NCBI GenBank assembly: GCA_002269645.1
Contig: NIVC01001389.1
Span: 1-64,000 of the forward strand
Origin: Macrostomum lignano
Lineage: Eukaryota
Length of the DNA stretch: 64,000 nucleotides
Reading direction: 5' to 3'
A program made the position numbers and the translations under genes. The notes beneath the pieces were generated by a model that did no database searches, was not told the DNA's origin, and worked only from the letters and a program-made list of their open reading frames with translations. How positions within the stretch are numbered: the first letter of the stretch is position 1; every line of letters starts with the position of its first letter. Shown in pieces: positions 18,641 to 56,179 of this stretch.

Positions 18641-25849
<7,209 letters not shown>

Positions 25850-26007: not shown

Positions 26008-26508
26008 CTGCAGCGTGTCATTCGGTTGAAACAGAAAAAAAACTGATTTGAAAATTGAGCCAGCCGGAGCTCATTAATTTTCCCGCCAGCAGCCAGCATG
26101 GAAACGGCGACAGGAAATCGAGGAAGCGGAAAGCTGGATTTTAATTGCAGCAGTGAGTACCCTCTCAATTCACGGACAAGCAGCCCTTCCCAGGCCGCAA
26201 CAAACAAACCAAGACTTCTGATCGACTGCCTGCATAGCTTTGATAAATTAGCCAATGCGGGTTAAATGTTCAAGTATAATCGATTTATTTAGTTATACTA
26301 CTCGAACCATCTTCAATGATGGCTAGCAGGTAACTGTTGCATGCAGCACTGTATGACTCAAAGGTTATTAAAGGCAAAAGCTTACGAAATAAAATCGCCT
26401 GATTCGAATGCAGGTCTAGAATTGTGTCCTATACTACGTGTAGCTAAAATGCGAGCCGTGTTCCTAGAGTTTTCCATCCGACAGTCGAGTCCAAGCTGCA
26501 GCCGGGCA

Positions 26509-29240
26509 TCACTTCTTGTCCCCGCTCTCCGCCGCCTCGGTGGGATATTTCTCCCGGAAGTAGGCCCGGCTGGCCTCCGGGTCGGGCGCCAGGCCGGCGT
26601 CCCCCGAGTTCCAGTCGGCCGGGCAGACCTCGCCGTGCTCGTCGGTGAACCGGAAGGCCGTCAGCTGGCGGTACAGCTCGCCGACGCTGCGGGACACCTG
26701 CGGGCAGGCGATGAAGGGTGCCCGAGGGTCAGGGTGCACCGACCCGCATCCGGGATACATTTCCCATTCTTGGTTCGGCAAGTCCCCATGCAGATAAAAT
26801 CCGCCAATCAAGGCGAACCACGAACTCTCACAATCGCACGAGCTGTCTGCAATTTCCTTGGGTAGCCGATCAACCTTCAAGTAGCCCCGGCCAATTTAAT
26901 AGATTAATCATTTAACAACAATGAATGACTGAGGCCACTGATGAACCGTTCGATTTGGCAAATTAATGCAAATTTAGCGAGTCTTATAGAAACAGAGAAC
27001 GCTCGGGTGCCCACGCAAGATGAAGCTTGAAGCGACGAGCCATGCAATGCACTGAGGGAGGCCCTGCAATATCAGCAAATCCGAGACAACGGAAGCCTAA
27101 TCAAGCAGAGCAGGAAGAGTTACCTAGGCTACGGGGTTGTAGCCTAGTCGTTAGAGCATTGGACTCACGATTGAAGGGTCGGGGGTTCGATTCCCAATCC
27201 CACTGGAACAATTTGTGTCCTTGCATTTAACTCTGCATTGCTTCAGTTCACCCAGCGGTAGAATGGGTGCCAGCATAAGCTGGGGTAATTGAGGATGTGT
27301 GTGGCGACCCTCTAATCTGTGGACTGAACAGCCGCACGCAGCCTTCAGATGCGCCGCGCGCTAGCTGCGGCTGAGCTGTCGGTTGCACATCTGGCCATTA
27401 GGGCAGGCGTAATTATTGATAATAATAATTATTCCTAAATAAATGTACTCCTTCATCTACATTCAAGAGTTGGCAATAGTTCACAAAACATATTTTTTAA
27501 TTCTGCCAAAGCATTTACTCGTACCAGCAAACAGTGCAAGTCGTAAATAACATATTTTTTCGGCAAGTGCAAAAAATATATGAATCATTTTTTATTCTGC
27601 GCAGAGACAAAGTCGGTGAGATCAAAAGCACCAATGGCTCTAATGCAGTGATCGCCGTCAGGCATTTTCCCGAAATTCAAGAGAGCTGCAGCGGCCTGAA
27701 GCTGCAACTCAAAGGCCTCTGTTTGTTTTGCTGATACTGGACAGACTGCAAAACCTTGCGGACAAAAGCTGCCATATCCGATTGCAGAAAACTATACGGG
27801 TCAACAACTGACGGATAGGCGTTCCGCTTGAGCTTGGAGCAATTTATACAGAAGGCTGGGTAAACACAGGCGTTTATGGCCTTTCAAATGCCAAAGCATT
27901 GCTTCAAGACTGCGCGCAACCTTGAAAACGGAAAATAAAAAGCCCCACAAAGTCTCCTTGCGAAAGAGTGTAATCATGCCAAGAAAGTGCTGCGTTGCAG
28001 GATGCAGCCCTAATTATGTCATCAAAGAAAGGTGCATGCATTGTCTTATGTCTTCCCGAAAGAGGCCAAATGGCCCGGCCGACGCAAGTTACGTAAATAG
28101 CCCAAGCCGACTGTCTGACCGTTTGAAAGCAGCTTCTGCTCGCCCCGTTTCTATAAAAAGCTGCCGATTTTGTTTGTCGTAACGTTTGAATGAATAAACT
28201 TGTTAACGTGACAGCATTCAGCTTCAGTTTAACTTTATTGTCAGCCTGGATGCATCAGTGATGTCTTACATGAAAGTCCAGGCCTCGAGATAAAAAATTA
28301 CACAAGACGTCATGCACTCGTGGCTGGTCACCCCAAAGCACCTTTTAACTGAATCTGGATGAAAATTGGCCATGCAGTTTCTTTCCTCTTCTGGAGCGCT
28401 GATTGGCTGAATGGAAACTGCCCACTGTACATGTTCGCATAAGCTCCGGTTTCCTTTCTACCCTCCGCTCCACCAACTCTGAGCGTAAACGACCGTTTAC
28501 CGTATTTGGGACCCTGAGCTCTGTTCTTAATCTTACGTTTTTTTTTCAGTTTTGCAAGCGTCCCTGCTAATTCCCAGGGCCCCTTCCCTGAATGTCCGCC
28601 TCTGCTAAGTATGGAGAGTAGCTACAACCTTCGAGTTACTGGAGCCCAAGTTCAGTGGCGCTCTTGTGCAAGCATAAAAGTCTCAAACTTTCGTCCGCAA
28701 AGTAGCTCCCAAGCCCCTCACCATGGCATCGTTGATGGTGAGCTGGCGCACCACCCCCTTGTCGTCAAGAATGACGTGGGCTCGGTGCAGCAGCTCCGCC
28801 TTGGCGTTCCACACACCGGCGAAGTGGCAGCTGAACCGGCCGGCGCCATCGCAGATGACGGGGAACGGCAGTTCCTGCAGGCCGCCGCGGCTGGCCGGCG
28901 TGTCCATCCAGCGCTGCACCTGGTCGACGCTGGCGTCCACCACGCCGACAACGTAAGTCTTGTGCTGATCGTGCAGCTCCTTGACCATGTCCGCTGAGAC
29001 GGCGTGAAACTCATCGAAAAGGTCGCTGCCAGAGTCGGACAGGCGGTCGACGGCCGGGCCGTGGGTCGGCAGGAACAGCAGCAGGAGGTAGCTGTGCGAC
29101 AGGCGGTAGGTGCGAAGGCTCACCTCCTGGAGACTGCCGCCGGCAACCGCCACTGCGGTGGCGTCTTCCGGGGCGACTTGGCCAACCGAGACGGGCTGGC
29201 TGGAGCTGCTGCTGGCCGGTTTGCGATAATTCGACGACAT
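26509..29240 (-). CDS. Peroxiredoxin-like protein (Prx1/AhpC fold, about 235 aa) lacking the peroxidatic cysteine
   Basis: Exons 29240-28722 and 26697-26509, phase 0, joined as ...RQLTINDAM|VSRSVGELYRQLTAFRFTDEHGEVCPADW... Prx1 landmarks: VGQVAP, YLLLLFLP, WMDTPASRGGL, RAHVILDDKGVVRQLTIND, HGEVCPADW. Open frame with no lesions. Confidence 0.9.
27133..27360 (+). mobile_element. tRNA-derived SINE, copy 1 (inside the Prx-like intron)
   Basis: A box tagcctagtcg, B box ggttcgattccc, body tgtgtccttg...cacccagcggtagaatgggtgccagc. Matches the reverse complement of 55960-56179. Confidence 0.85.
27976..28100 (+). mobile_element. THAP-domain N-terminal remnant (possible P-like transposase relic)
   Basis: MPRKCCVAGCSPNY resembles the THAP start; similarity is lost afterwards. 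Confidence 0.4.
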
Positions 29241-29789
29241 TTTTGTAACTTGAATTACAAATTTACGAATGCCGTAGTGTACGTGCTGTTGTGTAGTCAC
29301 CAGGACTTGCGAGTGTGATCTGTCAGGATATATGCACTTGTAGGTCCTGGTGGCAATTGGCACAAATCCCGAGTCTATGGCCCAAGTAAACTTACCGCTT
29401 TGAAAGTACTTTTTTACGCAGCGAAAGGCAAGCAGAGCAAAAAATGTGATCACGATGTCACGCGCGAGCCTATCTAAACAATCTATTTTTGAGTTAAACT
29501 GATGAGCTGCACTTTCTACCGCAGCGAGTCGGCACGCACAATGTTACAGTTGTGCCATACCTCGACAACAGTTATTATATAAATAATGTGATGGTAAAGC
29601 TGAGACAAGATGTTTTGGAAGGCTTCCACGCTATCGTGATGCAGAATATTTTTGTTAGGATCAAAGGGAAGAAGAGTGATGGAATTAATTACAGTCTAGA
29701 TTTTCAGCCTCGAAGAAGCGTAGAGCATCGGCAGGTCGGTCGGGAATAGAAATAATTGCTGCATGCAATTCAAGGCAGCAAAAGAAGAT

Positions 29790-32403: not shown

Positions 32404-35400
32404 TCACTCCAGGACCTCCGCTCGCTTCTGCGCCACGCGCTCCTGGCGCCGCTTCCTGGCCTCCCTGGCGCGGGTCCGCCTGGCCTCGGCCTGGTCCATA
32501 AGCTGCTTAGTGCGAGCCCGCTCCGCCTTCTTCCTGTGGATGTGCTCAACCAGGACGCGCTTGTTCTTGAATCCGTTGCCCTTGCAGCTCATGTACAGCT
32601 GGTGGTACAGGTGCTTGTCGAGCTTCTTGGCCTCGCGGTAGCGCTTGAGCAGGCGGCGAAGGACGCGCATGCGGCGCATCCAGAGCACCTTCTCGGGCAT
32701 GCGGGCGTTAGCCGTGCCCTTGCGCTTGCCCTGGCCCATGTGGCGGCCCTTGCGCCTGGCGATCAGGTTCTTGCGGCAGCGGGCGCGCGAGTGGACAGCT
32801 ACCGGCTTGCGGATGATCAGGCCGTCCTTGACGAGCTTGCGGATGTTCTGCCGGCTGTTGGCATTGGCGATTTCGCTGTTCTCGTTGGGGTCCAGCCAGA
32901 TCTTAGCTTTGCCGCACTTGAGAACCGCGGCGGCCAGGCGCTTCTGTAGGCGCAGGTTGCTAGGTGGTGGAGAGGGCAGGGGCGATTGGGAATGAGGATT
33001 AATATGATTGCAGCCTGAATTACAGTGGCATTTGCGATCTTGAGTACAGTGTTGAACAATAAAACAGAATACAACAATATATAAAAATAAAATATAATTT
33101 AATTTACAAACCAGCCAGTGTTTTTGTCTATCAGCTATGCTAGCCTATAGTGCAAGACCTTCACTATAGCAAAGCACTAAATTAGATACCAAAAGTACCA
33201 AGCATAAGATACAATAGAATAAAAAATTGCAACCATAGCTAAAACCAAAAGTACAGCAAAGCTTTTGAGTATTTTTGAAATCATATCCTATGATTTTATC
33301 CTAGCTTGGAAAGAAGTTTGAATTTATAATTTATAATATTTTGATATATTAAACCTAAACTACAAAACATGAAAATGTAATCTTTTTCAGTTACAGAGTG
33401 GCCTAAAGAGCTTTTTAAGAATCTGGGCAGTGTGGTAATTACTGTTTTAGCAGCTGTTTCTTGTTAGTTATATTATCATTATATACAGTCTATTATGCAT
33501 ACTAGAACAAAAATCTATATTAGGCAAATAAATGCCAGTTTATGCAAAAAACAGAACAATTCCTTAAAATACTGTATATGCAAAAATCTCTTAAAGGAAA
33601 TCAGCTGACTTTTTTATGAGAACAAAACTAAATGAACTCTTGGCTAGGTGATTCCCAAGGTTGCACATGTATGTGCACAAGCTTAGGAATCACCTGATTA
33701 TTTCTATTGGCAACATGCACATGTAAGTTGCAATTGGTTAAGAGTAATCATGTGACTACTAACTATTTTGTCCAATAGTAGCATGTTAATTTAGATTATA
33801 TAATAAGACACACACAGAGTTTTGATTTTTATAGGTTGAGATTTTTGTTAGCTTTAGTAGACTGAATACTAACTGAATAAGAAATTGATTGTCATAACTG
33901 CTTTGTGTGACTTTTACTTTTATTGACTTGATTTGAATGTTGAATTACAAGTGCTACAATTCATATTATTGAAACAAAAAAGAGCTAGCCTAGAAGTGAA
34001 CATACATGTGCAACAGTCGGCCGAGTCAGCCGATCCGGCCAACCGATTTGGTGGCCAACCAAGGAAGTCGCAAAAATGCCCACCTGAAAAAATACCAAAG
34101 TACTAAGTACCAAAAGTACCAAGCATAGTTTTTGAGTATTTTTACTAGCCAATTCCAACCCCCGTTGGGGCTTTCCGTCAGAACTCCTACCAAAGTTTTC
34201 CCACACAAAAGAAATTCACCCAACTGAACCCCCCATCCAAAGAATCTCTCTGATGCAAATAATCTCACATGCAAAAAACCCTCATCCAAAGAATCCCAAT
34301 ACAAAGAACCCCCCATCGACAGAATCCCCAAATCCGAAGAATTCCCCATTCAAGGAATCCTCTATCTGTAGAATTCCCTATTTAATGAATCGCCCATCCA
34401 TAGAATCTCACATGCAAAGAATACCAATCCTTCCCGTCCCATCCCCATCCCATCCCATTGATAGAATCCCCGATCCGAAGAATTTCCCATTCAAGGAATC
34501 CTCCCATCTGAAGAATTCCCCGTCCAATGAATCCCTTATTCAAGAAATCCCCCATCCACAGAAACCCTCTATCCAAAGAATCCCCCCACCCATCCCTATC
34601 CAAAGAATCGCCCATCCATCCCTATCTAAAGAATCCCCCATCTATCCCTATCCCAAGAATCCTCCTATTCATCCCTATCCAAAGAATTTCCCCATCCATT
34701 CCTATCTAAATAATCCCCCTAACCATCTATATCCAAAAAATTCCTTCTCTAAAAAATCCCCCCTCTAAAGAATTCACATCCTTAAATAATCCCCCATCAA
34801 AAGAATAATTGGCCAAAGAATCCAGAATCCCCTCATCTAAAGAACACCCGTTCAAATAACCCCCATCTAAAGAATCATTTATCTAAAGAACCCCCCATTC
34901 AAAAAACCCTCCATTGAAACAATGCCCCACCGAAGAAATTGCCCAAAAATTTATCCATTAGAAGCATCCCTCATCCAAAGAATCATCAATCCATAGAATT
35001 CCCCCAAGACTTAACATCTCAGAAATTTCCCCAAGCCTCGACACCTCAGAAATTTTCCCTAAGCATTGACATCTAAGCAATTCCGGCGCAAGCCTTGACA
35101 TGATACCAATTTCTCCCCGTCCAAAGCCTTGACATCTCAGTAATTCCCCTCCCCAAGCCTTGATATCTCAGTAATTCTCCCAGTAAGCCTTGATATCTCA
35201 GTAATTCCTCCAGTAAGTCTTGACATCTCAGCAATTTCTGCCCGTCCAAAGCCTTGGCATCTTAGCGATTCCCCTCCCCGAGACTTAAGACCTCAGCAAT
35301 TCCTTTTTAAGCCTTCACACCTCAGCAATTCCCCCCACAAGCCTTGACATCTCAGTGATTCCCCCACAAGCCTTGGCATCTCAGCAAGTCCCTCTTAAGC

Positions 35401-38400
35401 CTTCACATGTCATTAATTCTCCAAGGTAAGATTTTATACATGTATCTCAATAATTCCCCTTGTAAATCTTGACATCTTAAAATTCTCTTCCGAGCAAGCA
35501 TCCCCCAAGAGCAAGCATCCTTCCGATAGCAAGCATCCCCTGATAGAAAGTACCCCCAGCAAGATTAGTGAAGCAATTTCCTCAGCTAGCCAATTCCAAC
35601 TCCCGTTGGGGCTTTCCGTCCAAACTCCAGCCACAGTTTTCCTACGCAATAAAATTTCACCCAACTGAATCTCCCATACAAAGAATCCCTCATCCAAAGA
35701 ATACACCACCCATAAAATCCACGATACAAAGAATCTCACATGCAAAGAAGCCGCCATCAAAAAAACCTCCCATCGATAGAATCACCGATCCCAAGAATTC
35801 CCCATTCAAGGAATTCTCCTATCTGAAGAATTGCCCATCCATAGAATCTTACATGCAGAGAATCCCCATCCAAAGAACCCCCATCAATAGAATCCCCGAT
35901 CCAAAGAATCCCCCTATCCATCCCTATCCAAAAAATCCCCGACCTCCATCCATATCAAAAAATCCCCCATCCAAAGAACCCCTATCAATAGAATCCCGGA
36001 TCCAAAGAATTTCCCATTCAAGGACTTCTCCTATCTGAAGAATTTCCCATCCAATGCATTGCCCATCCATAACATCTGGGCAATGCATGCCTCATTCACA
36101 GAATCCCCATCGAAAGAATCCTCCACTCATTCATATCCAAAGAATCCCCCATCCATTCCTAACTAAAGAATCTCCCTCCAAAGAATCCCCATGCAAATAA
36201 TCCACATCCAAATAATCCCCATCCACAGAATCTCCATCCACATTATCCATTGATTCTCCCATCAAAAGAATAACTGGCCAAAGAATACCTTCATCTAAAA
36301 AACCCGTTCAAAAAATTCACGTCCAAATAATCCCAATCAACAGAATCCCCCATTCAAGGAATCCAAAGAATCTCCCATCCAAATAATCCACCCATTAACA
36401 GAATTCTTGGCCAAAGAATCCTTTCATCTCCTCGAGATATCCATTAGAAGCATCTCTCGTTCAAAGATTCCCCAATCCATAGAATTACCCCCCAAGACTT
36501 AACATCTCAGCAATTCCCACCAAGCCTTGACACCTCAGAAATTCCCTCCAAGCCTTGACATCTCAGCAATTCACTCTTAAGCCTTGGCATCTCAGTAATT
36601 CTCTCAGTAAGCCCTTATATCTCAGTAATTCCCCCAGTAAGTCTTGACATCTCAGCAATTCCCCTCACGTCTTGATATTTCAGCAATTTCCTCTCAGCCT
36701 TAGCATCTAAGTGTAATAAAAATTTTTGAATATGGACTACATGAATACTCGTAGCTTCTTTTCTACCTGATTTACCTGACGTTTTTTTAGTTTTCTTTAG
36801 CTAAAAAGTTTAAAATTAATTTTTTTAATAAAAAAGCTTTTACAAATTAAAAATTCGAACCCACGTCGCTGCATTAGCAGGTCAGTCTGTTTACCTCTAG
36901 GCTATCTCTCATCGTTTTGAAAACATAAATTGATAACATAAATTGTCGCACTTATATAACTCAACACTTTCAAAACTCCACGCACAGAGTAAATCACGTG
37001 AAGCAGTTATGACAATTTCTCAGGCAGTCTGTATCAGTTTCAATTTAAAGTCACCAATATAGTTACGCAATCTAAATCTAAATTCAATGGGGCTGGCTGG
37101 AATTGTGGAGTTTGCGATATTGGAGAGCGTACAATCAGTAAATAAAGTAAAGTTCATAGGAATCTTCTTTTTAATGCTGTGCTTTTAATTTTTCGAATCT
37201 CAGCAAAGAAATTATATTCCCGAACTCAGCGTTTCAAGCTCTTTCTTGCAATACAAGGCTCTCTTCTGAAAGTGAAAAACTCGAAGCACAAACAACGATT
37301 GAACATTCCTGCTTTAAAGCATTCAAATTCATAAGGTGTACATTCAACACTAGCTACAGTGAGAGGCTTTCAAGTTGATGCATTGAAATTAACAACTAAG
37401 CCAGCCCATGAATAATTGAATAGCGACACCTGCCCCTCAATTAAAATGTGTTGCGCAACCTTTCAATGCTTGCAGCTCTCCACGCGAGTGTGGAGAACCA
37501 ATGCTATAGTTGGCACTGAGTTATGATGCAATACAATTCCATCGGCAGTCAGACTGCTTCTCAATCGGAAAGAACTGTTTGAACTTTAAAAAAACAGGGA
37601 GAAAATCGAGTTTTTCGAATATTTAAGCCCGAAAAAATGAAGCAATTTCTTAGCAAAATGTTGTGTACCAGCGCACCATCAATACGCATCGAATGCAGAA
37701 AACCCCACGAAATTCCGACTATGTAGAGTCAAGTTAAGCAAAGGTTCCTATAGGTACATAGTTTTGATTTTTAGTATATTAGAAAATCATATACTATGAT
37801 TTTATCCTAGCTTGAGAAAGAAACTACTACTTGGTACTAACTCAATAGCTTAGTACTAAGTAGCTGACGAGGCATTTTGACTTAATAAGACAGTCATAGT
37901 TACTCCTGCTGTTTACCCAAAGTTGCATTAATTTTGTGTTAGGGTTTTTTACATGTAAGTTGCATTTTTGACCAAAAACTATGTCGCATTTTTGTTAAAA
38001 CTAAGTCGCATGGCCAACCGAATTTTGGAGGTTGTGCATGTATGGAAGTGAATAGATTGAACTGCTAATGTAGCAAAATAGCAATGCAGATTTGAATACT
38101 AAGGGAAACTTGCTATGGGAAGAATGCTAGCTATCTGGGGTTGCTTGCTTTATATAAGGGTTGTTTGCTTTTGGGGATGCTTGTTTGGGAGAATTGCTCA
38201 AATGTTGAGACTTACTAAAATAATAACCTGAATAACTGAGATATCAAGGCTTACTAGAGAAATTGCTAAGATATAATTTACTTATTATTATAATAAGTAT
38301 ATTATTAATATATTAATATTATTTATAATTATTAATATATTATTATTAATATTATTAATATAGAATTATTGAGATGTTAAGCCTTGAGAAAAAATGTTGA

Positions 38401-41400
38401 GATAGCAAGGCTTAAAAGGAAGTACTATGATGGCAAGGCCTAAATGGCATTGCTGAGATATCAATGCTTATAAAGGAATTGTTAAGATGTAAAGGCTTAT
38501 AGAAATGGAAATGTTCATCCCTATGGTCCCATACCAATAATTCCAATTTTATCCACACAGATCTGTCTTGATAATTTCCAACTTATCCCCACAGCAACTT
38601 ATTGAAATAGCTGCCACCATTCAAGTATTTAGACCGTGTCAATAATTCTAATTTTATTCACACAGATCCATGTCAATAATTTTCAGCTTATCCTCATGGC
38701 AGATTAGAAGAGAGAATCTTAAAATGAATCTGTAAAAAGCTGTCTATTTGTTTTCACTGTTTTACAAATCTTCCTATTCAAATAAACTACTGAATACTAA
38801 AAACTTTTTCATCATTGAAAGGGTTAATTTTAAATATTTGCTTAGCTGTCAGATTTGCTTAGAACAACTGAACAATCCTAAGATTGAGGCAAATAAGACT
38901 TGCAAAATTCAAAATTTAATATGTAATAATAATGATTAATAATACTAATAATAATGACAATATAGATTTAATGTTAGTATTATAAAACTAAATACAAACA
39001 ACTGCACAATCTTAGCTGTGGGGATAAGCTAAAAATTATTAACATGGATCCATGTGGATAAAATTGTAATTATTGACATGGCATATAGACCTGAATGGTG
39101 GCAGCTATTTCAATTAGCTGCTATGGGGATAAGCTTGAAATTATTGACATGGATAGGTATAGATAAAATTGAAATTATTAGTATAGGACCATGGGGATAA
39201 GCATTTCTTAGGGAAATTGCTAAGATATCAAGTCTTGGGGGGAATTACTAGGCCTAAGATATTAAGGCTTGCTAAGGGAATTACAAAAATGTCAAGTCTT
39301 ATAGAGTCTTGGGGTGGGAATAGCTGATGTCGAGGCTTTGAATTGCTTAGATGTCAAGGCTTAAGCTAAGGGCAATTGCTAAGATATAAAGGCTAAGGTT
39401 AGAAGCTACATATATAGTTATTAAAAAATTATTATATCCTTTGTTTGCTCCCTAATAGGAAAGAAGAGATTGCTAGTTTTATTCTAGACACTTTCAAATA
39501 AATAGCACTTAGGCCGACTATATTATGCAATTTAAACTCCTATATATCCTATTGAAAATGAGGGTAAATATTAAGAGGTTATTCAACTAATAGCCTGAAA
39601 GTTGATTAACAGGGTCCTAGTCATTTTGTCAACTGGCCATTTTGTCAACTTGGTTTTATCACTGGTTGTTTCGTCAACTAGCCAATGAAGCAATCTCAAA
39701 CCTTAGTCACTTCGTCAACTGGCCAACAAGAAGTGTTCCAACATTGGTCAGTTCATCAACTGCCAATAAACTACCCCCCGCAGCTGCAAAAAAGTAAAAC
39801 TGAACCCTGAAATGACTAAGTCGACAGGCTAATTAATATTCATACCCTTCTGCAACATCTGCCGACTTTCGATTGATGCATCTCTGTTATACACTTGTAC
39901 ATGTACTAACAAAATATAATGTGCTCATGTGTTTGAAATGTGTGCAGCACAACGAGGTTGACATCCCATGTTACACATTTGTATATGTTAAATTTTGAGT
40001 GCAGAAGTTAAGAAGTAGTACATATAGTTGAGGAGTACCCGGACCAAAGATAATGCTTAAAGTGGCCGGGTCCTCTATTCGCAAAACATACACATATAGA
40101 AAGCATTCCAAATCAAGCCATTATATACATTAATGTGGCCATGTATGACTGCGCAGCAGGTTGCTTGGATGGAACAGGTTGGCGTGGTGATACAAAAGCT
40201 GCGTTGTCACTTGCATAGGCAATCTTGAAGGCGGCACACAGCAGGCCAGCATGCACCACATCAACTTGTTGATTGAACAACTTCATCAGCGTCCAGGCAA
40301 TTGACAATGTATAGCAGGATGGTCTTGATTACTACCTCGCCTAGAACAATGCTGCCCTCAAGCAGTCAGCTGCATGTATATTAAGCTGGCTTTGCAGACT
40401 GCACGACTCCCCCAGACTACATGTAAATATACTGTAGCTCAAGCCAGTAGTGTTGGAACATACTATTTATTAGAACATACTATTTGATGAGAGGGCACAT
40501 TGCACATAATTTCTTCTAATCTAAGGGCACCCAACTCCTGCTGTTATATCAGTTTGTGGCATTATGACATAACTAGGGCCAATATCCAATTCTGTGTTGG
40601 AGTAGCCGAAAGTCTAGCTGAAAATGCTCAAATTTTCAACTAATTCAAACATTGTGCAACTGTACTGCACTCATTTCAAGGACTGCGCTTAAGTGACTTC
40701 AGTGGTCCAATTGACTGGGGCGCCAGTGCCATGAGTTTGCTGAAAGATGTCAATCTGTATCTCGCTCTATGGCTGGTGGGATAGCCACCTTGTCAGGGTC
40801 AGCAGTACTTTTGGTAGCTTAAAAGATTTCTTGCTCATGGTGCAGGGCTTGCAAAACATGGCCAAGTCTTGTGCAGCTACATGAGCAAGAATGCACGAAT
40901 CAAGAGTATGCCGCTGTGGTACTACACCCAATATTGCCAATCGGTTTGTGCATCTACCTGTGCCTTTGCATCTGTCTGCTTGTGTTTGCTTGTGCTTTCT
41001 TATAGTGCATTGTACATTTTAGTGTTAAGCATAACAGGAGTGAAATACCTTAATACATGTATGGCATAATCAATTGATGAGCATACATGAATTGTGTGTA
41101 ATTATATACTCTGATCAAGACTCAAGAGCATTACTAGATATCAAGATTCGCTGCAGGGGCTTCGGTTGACTATGCACAGCAGGGTGGAAGGGTGGGAAGG
41201 TGCACGTAGTCTACCAATTTTCACGACTCCATATATAGGGGACTTTATAGCAGTCCTTGATGCCTTTTGATAGGAGAAATACCCATGTTATGTAGTCGCA
41301 TGTATGGTCGCATAACAAACAAATACTCAAAGATTCATTAATCTTAAGGGTGACATATCTGCATAGAATATTTTTGCATTGAAACATTTAACCTAATGGA

Positions 41401-45461: not shown

Positions 45462-45613
45462 CAGTTGCGCAGCCAGAAAAGGGCATAGCCCCTCAAAGCT
45501 CTAAAAGTTTTGAAAATGCCATTGCTATTTATATAAAATACTGCTAAGTGGTGTCATTGTAGATAGCCACCTGCCTTCCCCCCCCCCAAAAAAAAATCCT
45601 GGCTGTGCCACTG
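45462..45613. mobile_element. Short degenerate MITE
   Basis: Ends cagttgcgcagccagaa / tcctggctgtgccactg are imperfect inverted repeats; no clean TSD. Confidence 0.4.
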
Positions 45614-46654
45614 ATAAAGTGTGTAAGACAAAGAAAAATGTATAAAATAAGGTATATAAAAAGTAAATAATTTTTAATAATCTAGCCTTTATTCCTTATC
45701 CTTATTGCTATTGCTGTTGCTAAATATATAAGAATATTTGGTTTCTTTTTCAACCTCAGCCTATTACTGGCTCTGCTTGCTGGTTCCCACTGTTGGCCAG
45801 CCACCTCTATTGTTGCAGTGACCAGTTGCACTGCAGCTTATCTTCTTGCTTCTTTTGCCCATTGCCTTTCTGCTGCGTGCTTCTCTTTTCTAGGTAAAGC
45901 TTAATGATAACTTTTGATAGGAAAGAGAATGTTGGGAAGTTTTGAAATTAAAATAAAGTACCCAAGTTAAATAGGGGAGAGAAACTGTCAGAGAGGGGAA
46001 AGAAACAGGTAGAGGGTTGAGAAACAAGAATCAGATAGGGGTTGATGGGTATATATAGATGGGTCATGGGTATATCTGACGCATTATCACATTGCACCTC
46101 GTTCTTGGCAGCTTCACTCTCTGAAGTTGTAACCTGCTGTTAGTATAAAGTGCAAACTTTGTGTTTGTTGTCCATACAGTCTGTTGCCTACATTCCCGAG
46201 ATTATGCTATGGACTTCTGTATACCTGGATGGAAGCAACTTGAAAAATGACCAAAATCCTATACCTAAAACATAGTACAGAGAGATGGGTAAAATCCTCA
46301 TGCTCAAATCCCATTAGTTCATAAGTGTAAATAGACAAAAATAGTTGGGTCCCCATGTGGTAAAGACTGTAAAATCCCCTTGAAACTATACTTATTTATT
46401 CTTTAAAATATACCTTATACCAGTACACACAGGCATGGTTCATTAGCAGTTTGCATAGCTTGGTTGTACCCACCCTACAGGAAAGACAACCATTCACAAA
46501 AGTGTATAGTAGAGCCCAGTTGATTTCTATAGACTTTCTAATTTCTAATTTCTATAGACTTGGGACTTCTATAGGTTGGGGTCGCATCCTTAGCTTTTTG
46601 CTTGTTAAAGCACATTGACATTGGTTGGTAAAACATTCAAACTGGATAGAAGCT

Positions 46655-55959: not shown

Positions 55960-56179
55960 ATTCTGCGTACGGCTGTTCAGTCCAAATACTGGGGGGTCGC
56001 CACACACAGCCTCAATTACCCCAGCTAATGCTGGCACCCGTTTTACAGCTGGATGAACTGAAGCAATGGAGAGTTAAGTGGTCTTGCTCAAGGACACAAA
56101 TTGTTCCAGTGGGATCGGGAATCGAACCCCCGACTTTCAAGTCCTGAGTCTGATGCTCTGACCACTAGGCTACAGCCCC
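55960..56179 (-). mobile_element. tRNA-derived SINE, copy 2
   Basis: Reverse complement ggggctgtagcctagtggtcagagc...ggttcgattcccgatcccactggaacaatttgtgtccttgagcaag...; same family as 27133-27360, including the ggactgaacagccg tail. Confidence 0.85.

What the first reader, a model, noticed from the sequence alone, without database searches (positions are those of the whole stretch)
26509..29240. Intact peroxiredoxin-fold gene with no peroxidatic Cys but a retained resolving Cys
Seen: a clean two-exon 235-aa ORF with Prx1 landmarks throughout. Where FYPxDFTFVCPTE is expected it reads FLPTHGPAVDRLSDSGSDLFDEF: no Cys, no Thr of PxxxTxxC, and an insertion of roughly a dozen residues. The Arg of RG/RA-F-IID and the C-terminal GEVCPADW are kept. 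Known: typical 2-Cys Prx catalysis needs PxxxTxxC. Inference: a maintained pseudo-peroxidase that could act as a chaperone, as a hetero-oligomer partner lending its resolving Cys to an active Prx, or as a redox relay.
Basis: partly seen in the sequence, partly recalled or inferred. Interest (0 to 1): 0.75.

Follow-up and report, generated by a model that had tools for sequence, protein, structure and literature searches.

The report
Peroxiredoxin gene without its catalytic cysteine
A flatworm (Macrostomum lignano) gene encodes a well-folded copy of the antioxidant enzyme peroxiredoxin that has lost the cysteine that reacts with peroxide but keeps, under selection, the partner cysteine and dimer-forming parts, so it is probably a non-catalytic helper subunit rather than an enzyme.

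Summary
Window 26509-29240 (minus strand) carries a two-exon, 235-aa gene. It is Macrostomum lignano Mlig020987.g1, on contig NIVC01001389.1.

- **Fold:** typical 2-Cys peroxiredoxin (Pfam AhpC-TSA plus 1-cysPrx_C; AF2 pLDDT 87; Foldseek TM 0.91 to reduced human PRDX2).
- **Lost:** the PxxxTxxC centre. Residues 1-129 contain no Cys, Leu74 sits at the peroxidatic position, and 11 extra residues are inserted.
- **Kept:** Pro58, Glu77, Trp111, Arg153, Arg176, GGL, YF and GEVC198PADW.
- **Not an artefact:** the window holds no other Prx-like exon, and the public annotation is built from transcripts and uses the same splice.
- **Selection:** the three subgenome copies differ 1.2-1.8% in the intron. 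In the folded core they show 0 non-synonymous and 2 synonymous changes.
- **Paralogue:** a 40%-identical M. lignano paralogue (Mlig026604/009355) forms a clade with it (100/100 bootstrap). It shares the remodelled block but keeps a Cys at the peroxidatic position.
- **Distribution:** no other clade member turned up in about 5.8 billion protein clusters. Independent Prx1-like proteins with the same loss and a retained resolving Cys exist in protists.

Verdict: a maintained pseudo-peroxidase, a new variant of a known kind. Its function is inferred, not shown; my best guess is that it donates the resolving Cys to a partner in a heterodimer.

The parts
28722..29240 (-). Exon 1 (codons 1-173): disordered N-terminus, beta1-beta7 of the Prx fold, the degenerate active-site loop, Arg153
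   Evidence: ORF, donor ATG|GTGAGG; tblastn of canonical Prx queries hits here
26698..28721 (-). Single intron, 2024 nt, GT..AG, phase 0. The paralogue Mlig026604/009355 has its last intron at the same position and phase (INDAM|VSRS against INHPE|ISRN)
26509..26697 (-). Exon 2 (codons 174-235 plus TGA): Arg176, helix alpha5, C-terminal arm with GEVC198PADW and the YF motif, acidic tail
29010..29069 (-). Codons 58-77 (PTHGPAVDRLSDSGSDLFDE). This replaces the PxxxTxxCPTE peroxidatic loop. It has no Cys or Thr in register. Residues 59-76 carry a net charge of -3. Residues 61-70 have mean pLDDT 50
29019..29021 (-). Leu74 codon (CTT), the position equivalent to the peroxidatic Cys
   Evidence: The pairwise alignment puts it opposite Cys58 of P0002. 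It lies in the first turn of predicted helix 72-80
28782..28784 (-). Arg153 codon, the conserved active-site Arg (canonical RGLFIID reads HRAHVILD here)
   Evidence: Invariant column in the 90-sequence alignment
26623..26625 (-). Cys198 codon, the resolving Cys in HGEVCPADW
   Evidence: Invariant column; read directly
26284..26289 (-). AATAAA, a possible polyadenylation signal about 220 nt after the stop codon (consensus match only)
   Evidence: read directly from the sequence

Best explanation
**What it is.** This is a real, transcribed gene of Macrostomum lignano. It encodes a protein of the typical 2-Cys (Prx1/AhpC) peroxiredoxin family whose peroxide-reducing centre has been dismantled. 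The peroxidatic Cys is replaced by Leu74, the Thr is gone, and 11 extra residues are inserted. The rest of the fold is intact and constrained: the active-site Arg153, Arg176, the beta7 edge strand, and the C-terminal arm with the resolving Cys198 and the GGL/YF motifs. It therefore cannot reduce peroxide by the peroxiredoxin mechanism and is a pseudo-peroxidase.

**Most likely mechanism (inferred, not shown).** It pairs through the conserved B-type (beta7 plus C-terminal arm) interface with a subunit that does carry a peroxidatic Cys. That partner would be its sister paralogue Mlig026604/009355, which keeps a Cys at that position, or the canonical M. lignano Prx1. It would lend its C-terminal arm and Cys198 to the partner's active site. 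The result would be an asymmetric dimer with one working site, whose intersubunit disulfide is resolved by thioredoxin.

**How likely.** I put about 0.85 on 'selectively maintained pseudo-peroxidase'. Given that, I put about 0.35-0.45 on the model in which it donates the resolving Cys within a heterodimer.
For: - **Fold.** Pfam AhpC-TSA and 1-cysPrx_C score above their cut-offs. PDB PRDX1/2 match at E about 1e-28. The AF2 model has pLDDT 87.3 and pTM 0.84, and Foldseek gives TM 0.91 and rmsd 2.3 A to reduced human PRDX2 7kiz.
- **Loss of the catalytic centre.** Residues 1-129 contain no Cys. A profile of 87 canonical Prx finds no Cys or Thr in register. No other Prx-like exon exists in the 64 kb.
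- **Expression and splice.** GenBank PAA68523.1 has the same exon junction. The Mlig_3_7 annotation was built only from RNA-seq and transcript assemblies (PMC5730564).
- **Recent selection.**
  - The three copies match the S, L1 and L2 subgenomes, whose reported divergence is 1.39-1.58% (PMC10733133).
  - Their introns differ 1.24-1.79% with 4-13 indel events.
  - In codons 15-224 there are 0 non-synonymous and 2 synonymous changes and no indel.
  - About 6-11 non-synonymous changes would be expected if the core were neutral.
  - All three amino-acid changes lie in the low-confidence termini.
- **Deep selection.**
  - The paralogue pair P0002/P0125 shows 2 non-synonymous against 7 synonymous changes.
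  - The window gene and P0002 form a clade in 100 of 100 bootstraps despite only 40% identity.
  - They share the intron position and the block MVKELH..KTYVVGVVDA.
- **Pattern of conservation.** Highly conserved canonical columns are kept at 9 of 10 in the C-terminal arm, 5 of 8 in beta6-beta7 and 7 of 11 in alpha5. Only 3 of 16 are kept in the peroxidatic loop plus alpha2.
- **Possible partners exist.**
  - P0002 keeps a Cys that the canonical profile aligns to the peroxidatic column. That Cys is the first residue of its predicted alpha2 helix.
  - A canonical prdx1 transcript (primers encode RGLFII and FQFTDK) is expressed in M. lignano (PMC5043416).
- **Recurrence.** Five other Prx1-like proteins lack the peroxidatic Cys yet keep the resolving Cys: Tritrichomonas musculus KAK8838833.1, P0197, P0228, P0148 and P0147. 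Each is closer to canonical Prx than to the M. lignano clade.
Against: - No biochemical, interaction or tissue-expression data were found. Searches of paper text and of five papers' supplements for the gene identifiers returned nothing.
- Only monomers could be modelled, so neither homo- nor hetero-dimerisation was tested.
- The resolving-Cys motif might be kept for structural reasons.
- The selection test among the three copies rests on few substitutions (2 synonymous). Gene conversion limited to the exons cannot be strictly excluded.
- RNA-seq reads cannot easily be assigned among three 99%-identical copies, so expression of this particular copy is not proven.
- The remodelled peroxidatic loop contacts the partner's C-terminal arm in canonical dimers. 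This could also disturb pairing with a canonical Prx.
Confidence: 0.4

Rival explanations
1. It is a peroxidase-independent holdase chaperone or scaffold that works as a homo-oligomer. Lacking an oxidisable peroxidatic Cys, it would be locked in the reduced-like, fully folded state, like the Cys-to-Ser mutants that crystallise as decamers.
For: - The AF2 model is closest to reduced, fully folded Prx structures and to Cys-to-Ser mutants (7kiz, 2z9s, 3sbc).
- Prx chaperone function in decameric or high-molecular-weight forms is established (reviewed in PMC7435893, which cites Jang 2004 and Teixeira 2019).
- The acidic residues around position 74 (D73, D76, E77) could mimic the negative charge of a hyperoxidised Cys. 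This last point is my inference.
Against: - As I recall it, the A-type decamer interface is formed by the peroxidatic loop and the alpha3 motif DSxFSHLAW. Those segments are the most remodelled parts here (3 of 16 and 1 of 3 conserved columns kept).
- A chaperone role does not explain why Cys198 and its motif are invariant, here and in the other lineages that lost the peroxidatic Cys.
Confidence: 0.22
2. It is a redundant duplicate drifting towards a pseudogene. The intact ORF would only reflect the youth of the three copies.
For: - The N-terminal half is strongly degraded relative to canonical Prx.
- The clade is confined to one species in the databases searched.
- Whole-CDS dN/dS among the three copies is about 0.5-0.6, on 3 non-synonymous and 2 synonymous changes.
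Against: - The ORF, the splice sites and the intron position have survived divergence to 40% identity from the sister paralogue.
- Blocks of 17 of 19 identical residues and an invariant C-terminal motif remain.
- The folded core has no non-synonymous change and no indel, while the introns carry 4-13 indel events per 2 kb.
- The sister pair has dN/dS of about 0.09.
- AF2 folds it with high confidence, and transcripts exist.
Confidence: 0.07
3. It is still a thiol peroxidase that uses another Cys (Cys130 in VICD, Cys138 in FSCH, or Cys198 itself) as the peroxide-reactive residue.
For: - Arg153, Arg176, Glu77, Trp111 and Pro58 of the pocket are retained.
- Cys130 is conserved in the sister paralogue (PVICD in both).
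Against: - Cys138 is not conserved in the paralogue.
- Cys130 lies in strand beta5 (predicted E128-130). As I recall the sheet order, that is two strands away from beta3, not at the N-terminus of alpha2 beside the Arg.
- The activating Thr is absent, and the loop that shapes the pocket is replaced by a low-confidence insert.
Confidence: 0.05
4. It is a gene-model artefact: the true mRNA uses another exon that carries PxxxTxxC.
For: - Exon 2 encodes only the last 62 residues, so in principle it could be joined to another 5' exon.
- An older UniRef model (A0A1I8GK59) mis-joins this gene to the downstream guanylate cyclase.
Against: - tblastn with canonical Prx queries finds only these two exons in the 64 kb. 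That span includes about 34.7 kb upstream. The one weak hit at 45.6 kb is low-complexity and contains a stop codon.
- The transcript-derived GenBank proteins of all three copies use exactly this junction.
- The paralogue has the same architecture.
Confidence: 0.03

Closest known systems
Typical 2-Cys peroxiredoxins of the Prx1/AhpC subfamily (human PRDX1/PRDX2, PDB 4xcs, 7kiz, 1qmv)
   Same: - The fold matches (TM 0.91).
- The beta7 dimer strand is kept (VVRQLTIN against ILRQITVN).
- Both Arg residues, the Trp of the LAW motif, GGL, YF and the resolving Cys in HGEVCPA-W are kept.
- Sequence identity is 34-39%.
   Different: - There is no peroxidatic Cys and no Thr.
- There are 11 extra residues around the peroxidatic loop and alpha2.
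- The alpha3 motif DSxFSHLAW is replaced by DASVDQVQRW.
- The conserved Gly of VGRS is Ser.
- The branch is long: Kimura distance 1.4, against 0.67 among canonical members.
M. lignano paralogue Mlig026604.g1 / Mlig009355.g1 (PAA52185.1, PAA88166.1; P0002, P0125)
   Same: - It is the sister clade (100/100 bootstrap).
- It shares the block MVKELH..KTYVVGVVDA, PVICD, SR in place of GR, and the last intron position.
- It also lacks the canonical PxxxTxxC motif.
   Different: - It keeps a Cys at the peroxidatic position (PSC58FAEL, the first residue of alpha2).
- Its loop insert is only 4 residues and is basic (+4) rather than acidic (-3).
- It has lost GGLG.
- It has 3 exons and 211 aa.
Engineered peroxidatic-Cys mutants of Prx (rat Prx1 C52S 2z9s, yeast Tsa1 C47S 3sbc, T. 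circumcincta Prx1 double mutant)
   Same: They lack the peroxidatic Cys but are folded. The mutant in PMC6617597 has no detectable peroxidase activity. The others appear among the best structural matches.
   Different: Those are laboratory point mutants with an otherwise canonical active site. This is a natural gene with a rebuilt loop, kept by selection.
Natural Prx1-like proteins that lack the peroxidatic Cys but keep the resolving Cys in other eukaryotes (Tritrichomonas musculus KAK8838833.1 = P0206; unnamed P0197, P0228, P0148, P0147)
   Same: Ser, Asn or another residue stands in place of the peroxidatic Cys, while the (V/Q)CP resolving motif is retained. All carry the AhpC-TSA and 1-cysPrx_C domains.
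   Different: - Their losses are independent. Each is 25-35% identical to the window protein and closer to canonical Prx.
- Most have simple substitutions without a loop insertion.
- P0148 is fused to an Mpv17/PMP22 domain.
- None carries a source name that goes beyond 'peroxiredoxin' or 'hypothetical protein'.
1-Cys peroxiredoxins (Prx6 subfamily)
   Same: The Pfam domain 1-cysPrx_C matches the C-terminal region.
   Different: Prx6 proteins keep the peroxidatic Cys and lack the resolving Cys. This protein is the reverse. Its best matches are all Prx1-type.

Membership tests
Peroxiredoxin, Prx1/AhpC subfamily (typical 2-Cys) | Thioredoxin-like Prx fold with AhpC-TSA domain and C-terminal extension | tested here: met
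   Pfam scores 38.1 and 38.8 bits, above the cut-offs. AF2 pLDDT is 87.3. Foldseek gives TM 0.91 to PRDX2.
Peroxiredoxin, Prx1/AhpC subfamily (typical 2-Cys) | PxxxTxxC motif with the peroxidatic Cys in the first turn of helix alpha2 | tested here: not met
   Only the Pro (P58) remains. Residues 1-129 contain no Cys, and Leu74 occupies the position.
Peroxiredoxin, Prx1/AhpC subfamily (typical 2-Cys) | Conserved active-site Arg (RGLFIID), and the second Arg of Prx1/Prx6 types (GRS) | tested here: met
   Arg153 and Arg176 fall in invariant columns of the 90-sequence alignment.
Peroxiredoxin, Prx1/AhpC subfamily (typical 2-Cys) | Resolving Cys in the C-terminal arm (GEVCP) | tested here: met
   Cys198 lies in HGEVCPADW.
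Peroxiredoxin, Prx1/AhpC subfamily (typical 2-Cys) | Thiol-dependent peroxidase activity | not testable with these tools
   This needs a recombinant protein assay. The sequence predicts no activity. An engineered Prx1 lacking both the peroxidatic and the resolving Cys has none (PMC6617597).
Peroxiredoxin, Prx1/AhpC subfamily (typical 2-Cys) | B-type antiparallel dimer, and A-type assembly into decamers | not testable with these tools
   Only monomers could be predicted. The beta7 strand and C-terminal arm are conserved, while the peroxidatic loop and alpha3 are remodelled.
Pseudoenzyme (non-catalytic homologue of an enzyme family) | Clear homology to an active enzyme family, with loss of essential catalytic residues | tested here: met
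Pseudoenzyme (non-catalytic homologue of an enzyme family) | Expressed and kept by purifying selection, as opposed to a pseudogene | tested here: met
   - The annotation is transcript-based.
- The folded core of the three copies shows 0 non-synonymous and 2 synonymous changes, against 1.2-1.8% intron divergence.
- The paralogue pair has dN/dS of about 0.09.
- Caveats: the substitution counts are small, and expression is shown only at the level of the gene cluster, not this copy.
1-Cys peroxiredoxin (Prx6) | Peroxidatic Cys present, resolving Cys absent | tested here: not met
   The opposite pattern is found. The nearest structures are Prx1-4 types.

The most novel reading that the evidence does not exclude
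Peroxiredoxins that keep only the resolving Cys could be a recurrent, so far undescribed class of regulatory subunit. In M. lignano the two divergent paralogues would divide the labour. Mlig026604/009355 would supply a non-canonical peroxidatic Cys. Mlig020987 would supply only the C-terminal arm and the resolving Cys. Their oppositely charged loops (+4 against -3) would favour an obligate asymmetric hetero-oligomer that acts as a half-site peroxide sensor or relay rather than a scavenger. The independent protist proteins with the same loss would work in the same way with their own canonical partners.
Probability: 0.15. Interest if true: 0.75.

Novelty: new variant of a known kind. Interest (0 to 1): 0.5.

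Why it matters
- **A gap in what is described.** Peroxiredoxins are defined by their peroxidatic Cys, and classification schemes are built on the active-site signature. Phrase searches of about 8 million open papers turned up only engineered mutants and no natural case.
- **A natural separation of functions.** A Prx1-type protein that has lost that Cys, yet keeps the resolving Cys, the Arg residues and the dimer elements under selection, separates the non-catalytic functions of the scaffold from peroxide reduction. Those functions are partner activation, chaperoning and redox relay.
- **Possibly a general solution.** The same pattern appears independently in protists, which suggests a recurrent evolutionary outcome.
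- **Testable in the organism.** According to the papers' titles and abstracts, M. lignano has established transgenesis. In vivo tests are therefore realistic.

Tried and rejected
- **Alternative exon.** tblastn with two canonical Prx queries and the paralogue found only the two exons. A weak hit at 45595-45666 is hydrophobic low-complexity sequence with a stop codon.
- **Orthologues elsewhere.** I ran a word-indexed search with the protein, a search with a clade profile, and an exhaustive phmmer over 1.84 billion representatives. Scores drop from 381-526 bits (M. lignano) to at most 131 bits (canonical Prx). Other Macrostomum proteomes are probably not in these databases, so this absence is weak evidence.
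- **Expression class.** Searches for Mlig020987, Mlig026604 and Mlig009355 in paper text and in the supplements of five M. lignano papers found nothing.
- **Literature precedent for a natural pseudo-peroxiredoxin.** Four phrase searches returned only engineered mutants or unrelated uses.
- **MAFFT placement of the insertion.** MAFFT put a 12-residue gap after KTY. I rejected this by register counting from the conserved Gly and Trp, and by HMMER alignment to a canonical profile. Both place the extra residues in the peroxidatic loop and alpha2.
- **THAP-domain guess.** An ORF in the intron (27922-28182, plus strand) has no Pfam match.
- **tRNA gene in the intron.** ARAGORN finds none. Rfam gives a marginal tRNA match, so it is more likely a tRNA-derived repeat.
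- **Active-site geometry.** Model coordinates are not exposed. I could not measure whether an Asp or Glu contacts Arg153, or how far Cys130 lies from the pocket.
- **Selenocysteine.** The exon-1 ORF has no in-frame TGA, so Sec at the active site is excluded.
Full report
**What is in the sequence**

On the minus strand, an ATG at 29240 opens exon 1 (29240-28722). Exon 1 ends at a GTGAGG donor. A 2024-nt intron (28721-26698) ends in CCGCAG. Exon 2 (26697-26509) runs to a TGA stop. Both junctions are in phase 0, and the spliced ORF is 235 aa. The exons are 66-71% GC in a window of 47% GC. The window is identical to the start of Macrostomum lignano contig NIVC01001389.1 (assembly GCA_002269645.1, Mlig_3_7). 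The gene is BOX15_Mlig020987g1, PAA68523.1.

**Family and fold**

- Pfam AhpC-TSA scores 38.1 bits and 1-cysPrx_C scores 38.8 bits, both above their curated cut-offs.
- The best solved relatives are human and rat PRDX1/PRDX2 at E about 1e-28. The alignment is much stronger after residue 110 than before it.
- An AlphaFold2 model built on a 90-sequence alignment has mean pLDDT 87.3 and pTM 0.84. Confidence is low only at the termini and in residues 61-80.
- Foldseek places the model on reduced, fully folded typical 2-Cys Prx structures. The best match is 7kiz, with TM 0.91 normalised to the target and rmsd 2.3 A.

**What is lost and what is kept**

Lost:
- Residues 1-129 contain no Cys.
- A profile of 87 canonical Prx sequences finds neither the Thr nor the Cys of PxxxTxxC in register.
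- Counting from the conserved Gly of strand beta4, the protein has 11 extra residues between Pro58 and beta4.
- Leu74 lies in the first turn of predicted helix 72-80, where the peroxidatic Cys normally sits. It aligns with Cys58 of the paralogue.

Kept:
- Pro58, Glu77, Trp111, Arg153, Arg176, GGL, YF and HGEVC198PADW.

Conservation of highly conserved canonical columns, by region:

| Region | Columns kept |
|---|---|
| C-terminal arm | 9 of 10 |
| beta6-beta7 | 5 of 8 |
| alpha5 | 7 of 11 |
| Peroxidatic loop plus alpha2 | 3 of 16 |
| alpha4 region | 1 of 6 |

**Not an artefact**

tblastn with canonical Prx queries finds only these two exons in the 64 kb. The single weak extra hit is low-complexity sequence with a stop codon. 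The GenBank proteins of all three genomic copies use the same junction, INDAM|VSRSV. The Mlig_3_7 annotation was derived exclusively from RNA-seq assemblies and a de novo transcriptome (PMC5730564). The splice and the expression are therefore supported at the level of the gene cluster. They cannot be assigned to this particular copy.

**Selection**

*Recent.* M. lignano has three subgenomes (S, L1, L2) that differ by 1.39-1.58% (PMC10733133). The three copies of this gene are the window copy, g2 on NIVC01002792.1 and g3 on NIVC01000319.1. All three have RPL19e upstream.
- Their introns differ by 1.24-1.79%, with 4-13 indel events.
- In codons 15-224 there are 0 non-synonymous changes, 2 synonymous changes and no indel.
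- The three amino-acid substitutions (S10G, S11G, K234N) and one Ser-codon indel all lie in the low-confidence termini.
- With about 475 non-synonymous sites, neutrality predicts about 11 changes at the intron rate, or about 6 at the exon synonymous rate. Zero observed gives a Poisson P of about 2e-5 to 2e-3. This arithmetic is mine.

*Deep.* A second M. lignano group (Mlig026604.g1 and Mlig009355.g1, 211 aa) is 40% identical to the window protein.
- It forms a clade with the window gene in 100 of 100 NJ bootstraps.
- Both lie on long branches: Kimura distance to canonical Prx is 1.4-1.7, against 0.67 among canonical members.
- It shares the last intron position and phase.
- It shares a block, MVKELH..KTYVVGVVDA, that is 17 of 19 identical yet unlike canonical Prx.
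- Its two copies differ by 2 non-synonymous and 7 synonymous changes.

A decaying duplicate would not look like this.

**The paralogue is informative**

The paralogue also lacks PxxxTxxC. It does keep a Cys that the canonical profile aligns to the peroxidatic column, after a 4-residue insert. That Cys is the first residue of its predicted alpha2 helix. Its loop is basic (net +4), whereas the window protein's loop is acidic (net -3). The likely order of events is this: the common ancestor first lost the canonical loop, and the Mlig020987 lineage later lost the Cys.

**Distribution**

No other member of this clade appears in 5.8 billion protein clusters or in 1.84 billion representatives. Other macrostomid proteomes are probably missing from these databases, so the age of the clade is unknown.

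Scanning the retrieved homologues for full-length proteins without the motif gave five further natural cases. They are Tritrichomonas musculus KAK8838833.1, P0197, P0228, P0148 and P0147.
- All five have lost the peroxidatic Cys and kept the resolving Cys.
- All of them are closer to canonical Prx than to the flatworm clade, so the losses are independent.
- P0148 is fused to an Mpv17/PMP22 domain.

Phrase searches of the paper library returned only engineered mutants.

**How it most likely works**

*Shown:*
- The Prx1 fold is intact.
- The catalytic Cys and Thr are absent.
- The core is under purifying selection.
- The dimer strand and the C-terminal arm with the resolving Cys are conserved.
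- Subunits that carry a Cys at the peroxidatic position exist in the same organism. One is the paralogue. The other is a canonical prdx1 whose qPCR primers encode RGLFII and FQFTDK (PMC5043416).

*Inferred from the established typical 2-Cys mechanism:* each active site of the B-type dimer is made of the peroxidatic Cys of one chain and the resolving Cys of the other. On that basis the protein cannot reduce peroxide itself, but it can complete the site of a partner. I therefore favour a non-catalytic subunit that donates the resolving Cys within an asymmetric heterodimer. I put about 0.35-0.45 on this, given a maintained pseudo-peroxidase at about 0.85.

*Main rival:* a redox-independent chaperone or scaffold homo-oligomer. 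The segments that I recall forming the decamer interface are the most remodelled ones here. A chaperone role also does not explain the invariant Cys198.

*Less likely:* peroxidase activity through Cys130 or Cys138, neutral decay, and a gene-model artefact. Reasons are given under the rival explanations.

**Verdict**

This is a new variant of a known kind, and possibly one instance of a recurrent class that keeps only the resolving Cys.

Noticed in passing
window about 21284-25849 (minus strand): A soluble guanylate cyclase gene (Pfam HNOB, HNOBA, Guanylate_cyc) starts at an ATG at 25849. This is about 660 nt downstream of the Prx-like stop codon, on the same strand. An older UniRef model (A0A1I8GK59, 940 aa) fuses the two genes. 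They may share a transcriptional unit, or the fusion may be an artefact.
   Followed up: partly
window 27133-27202 (+), inside the intron; second copy 56106-56135 (-): A tRNA-like element scores 33.7 bits against Rfam tRNA (gathering score 29), but ARAGORN does not call it. Its 3' 30-mer recurs once more in the window with 2 mismatches. It is probably a tRNA-derived repeat.
   Followed up: partly
window 32404-39310 and beyond (minus strand): A ribosomal protein L19e gene lies upstream of the Prx-like gene. The same neighbour is present at all three homeologous loci (L001, L003, L004).
   Followed up: no
window 29235-29300 against L003 and L004: The window copy has one extra Ser codon (MSSNY against MSNY). 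The window copy and g2 carry about 38-43 extra nucleotides just upstream of the ATG compared with g3. The GenBank protein PAA68523.1 (…ARIMSNY…) follows the g3-like transcript, not an exact translation of this locus.
   Followed up: yes
L002 4208-4303 and 10001-10096: The paralogue locus (Mlig026604.g1) contains exon 1 twice, inside a 404-nt repeat of 93% identity. Either copy splices in frame to exon 2.
   Followed up: partly
P0148 (ENA and JGI metagenome eukaryote, 441 aa): A Prx1-like domain without the peroxidatic Cys, and with His in place of the active-site Arg, is fused to an Mpv17/PMP22 membrane domain.
   Followed up: partly
L003 8815-11814 against the window and L004: The 3 kb downstream of the g2 copy aligns poorly with the other two copies (about 27% mismatches, against 2.9% between the window and g3). 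This suggests a structural difference or a repeat insertion in that subgenome.
   Followed up: no
(representative library): The paralogue P0002 scored 157 bits in the indexed search. It does not appear among the representatives, where only one protein had E below 1e-30. This is presumably an effect of how the clusters are represented.
   Followed up: no
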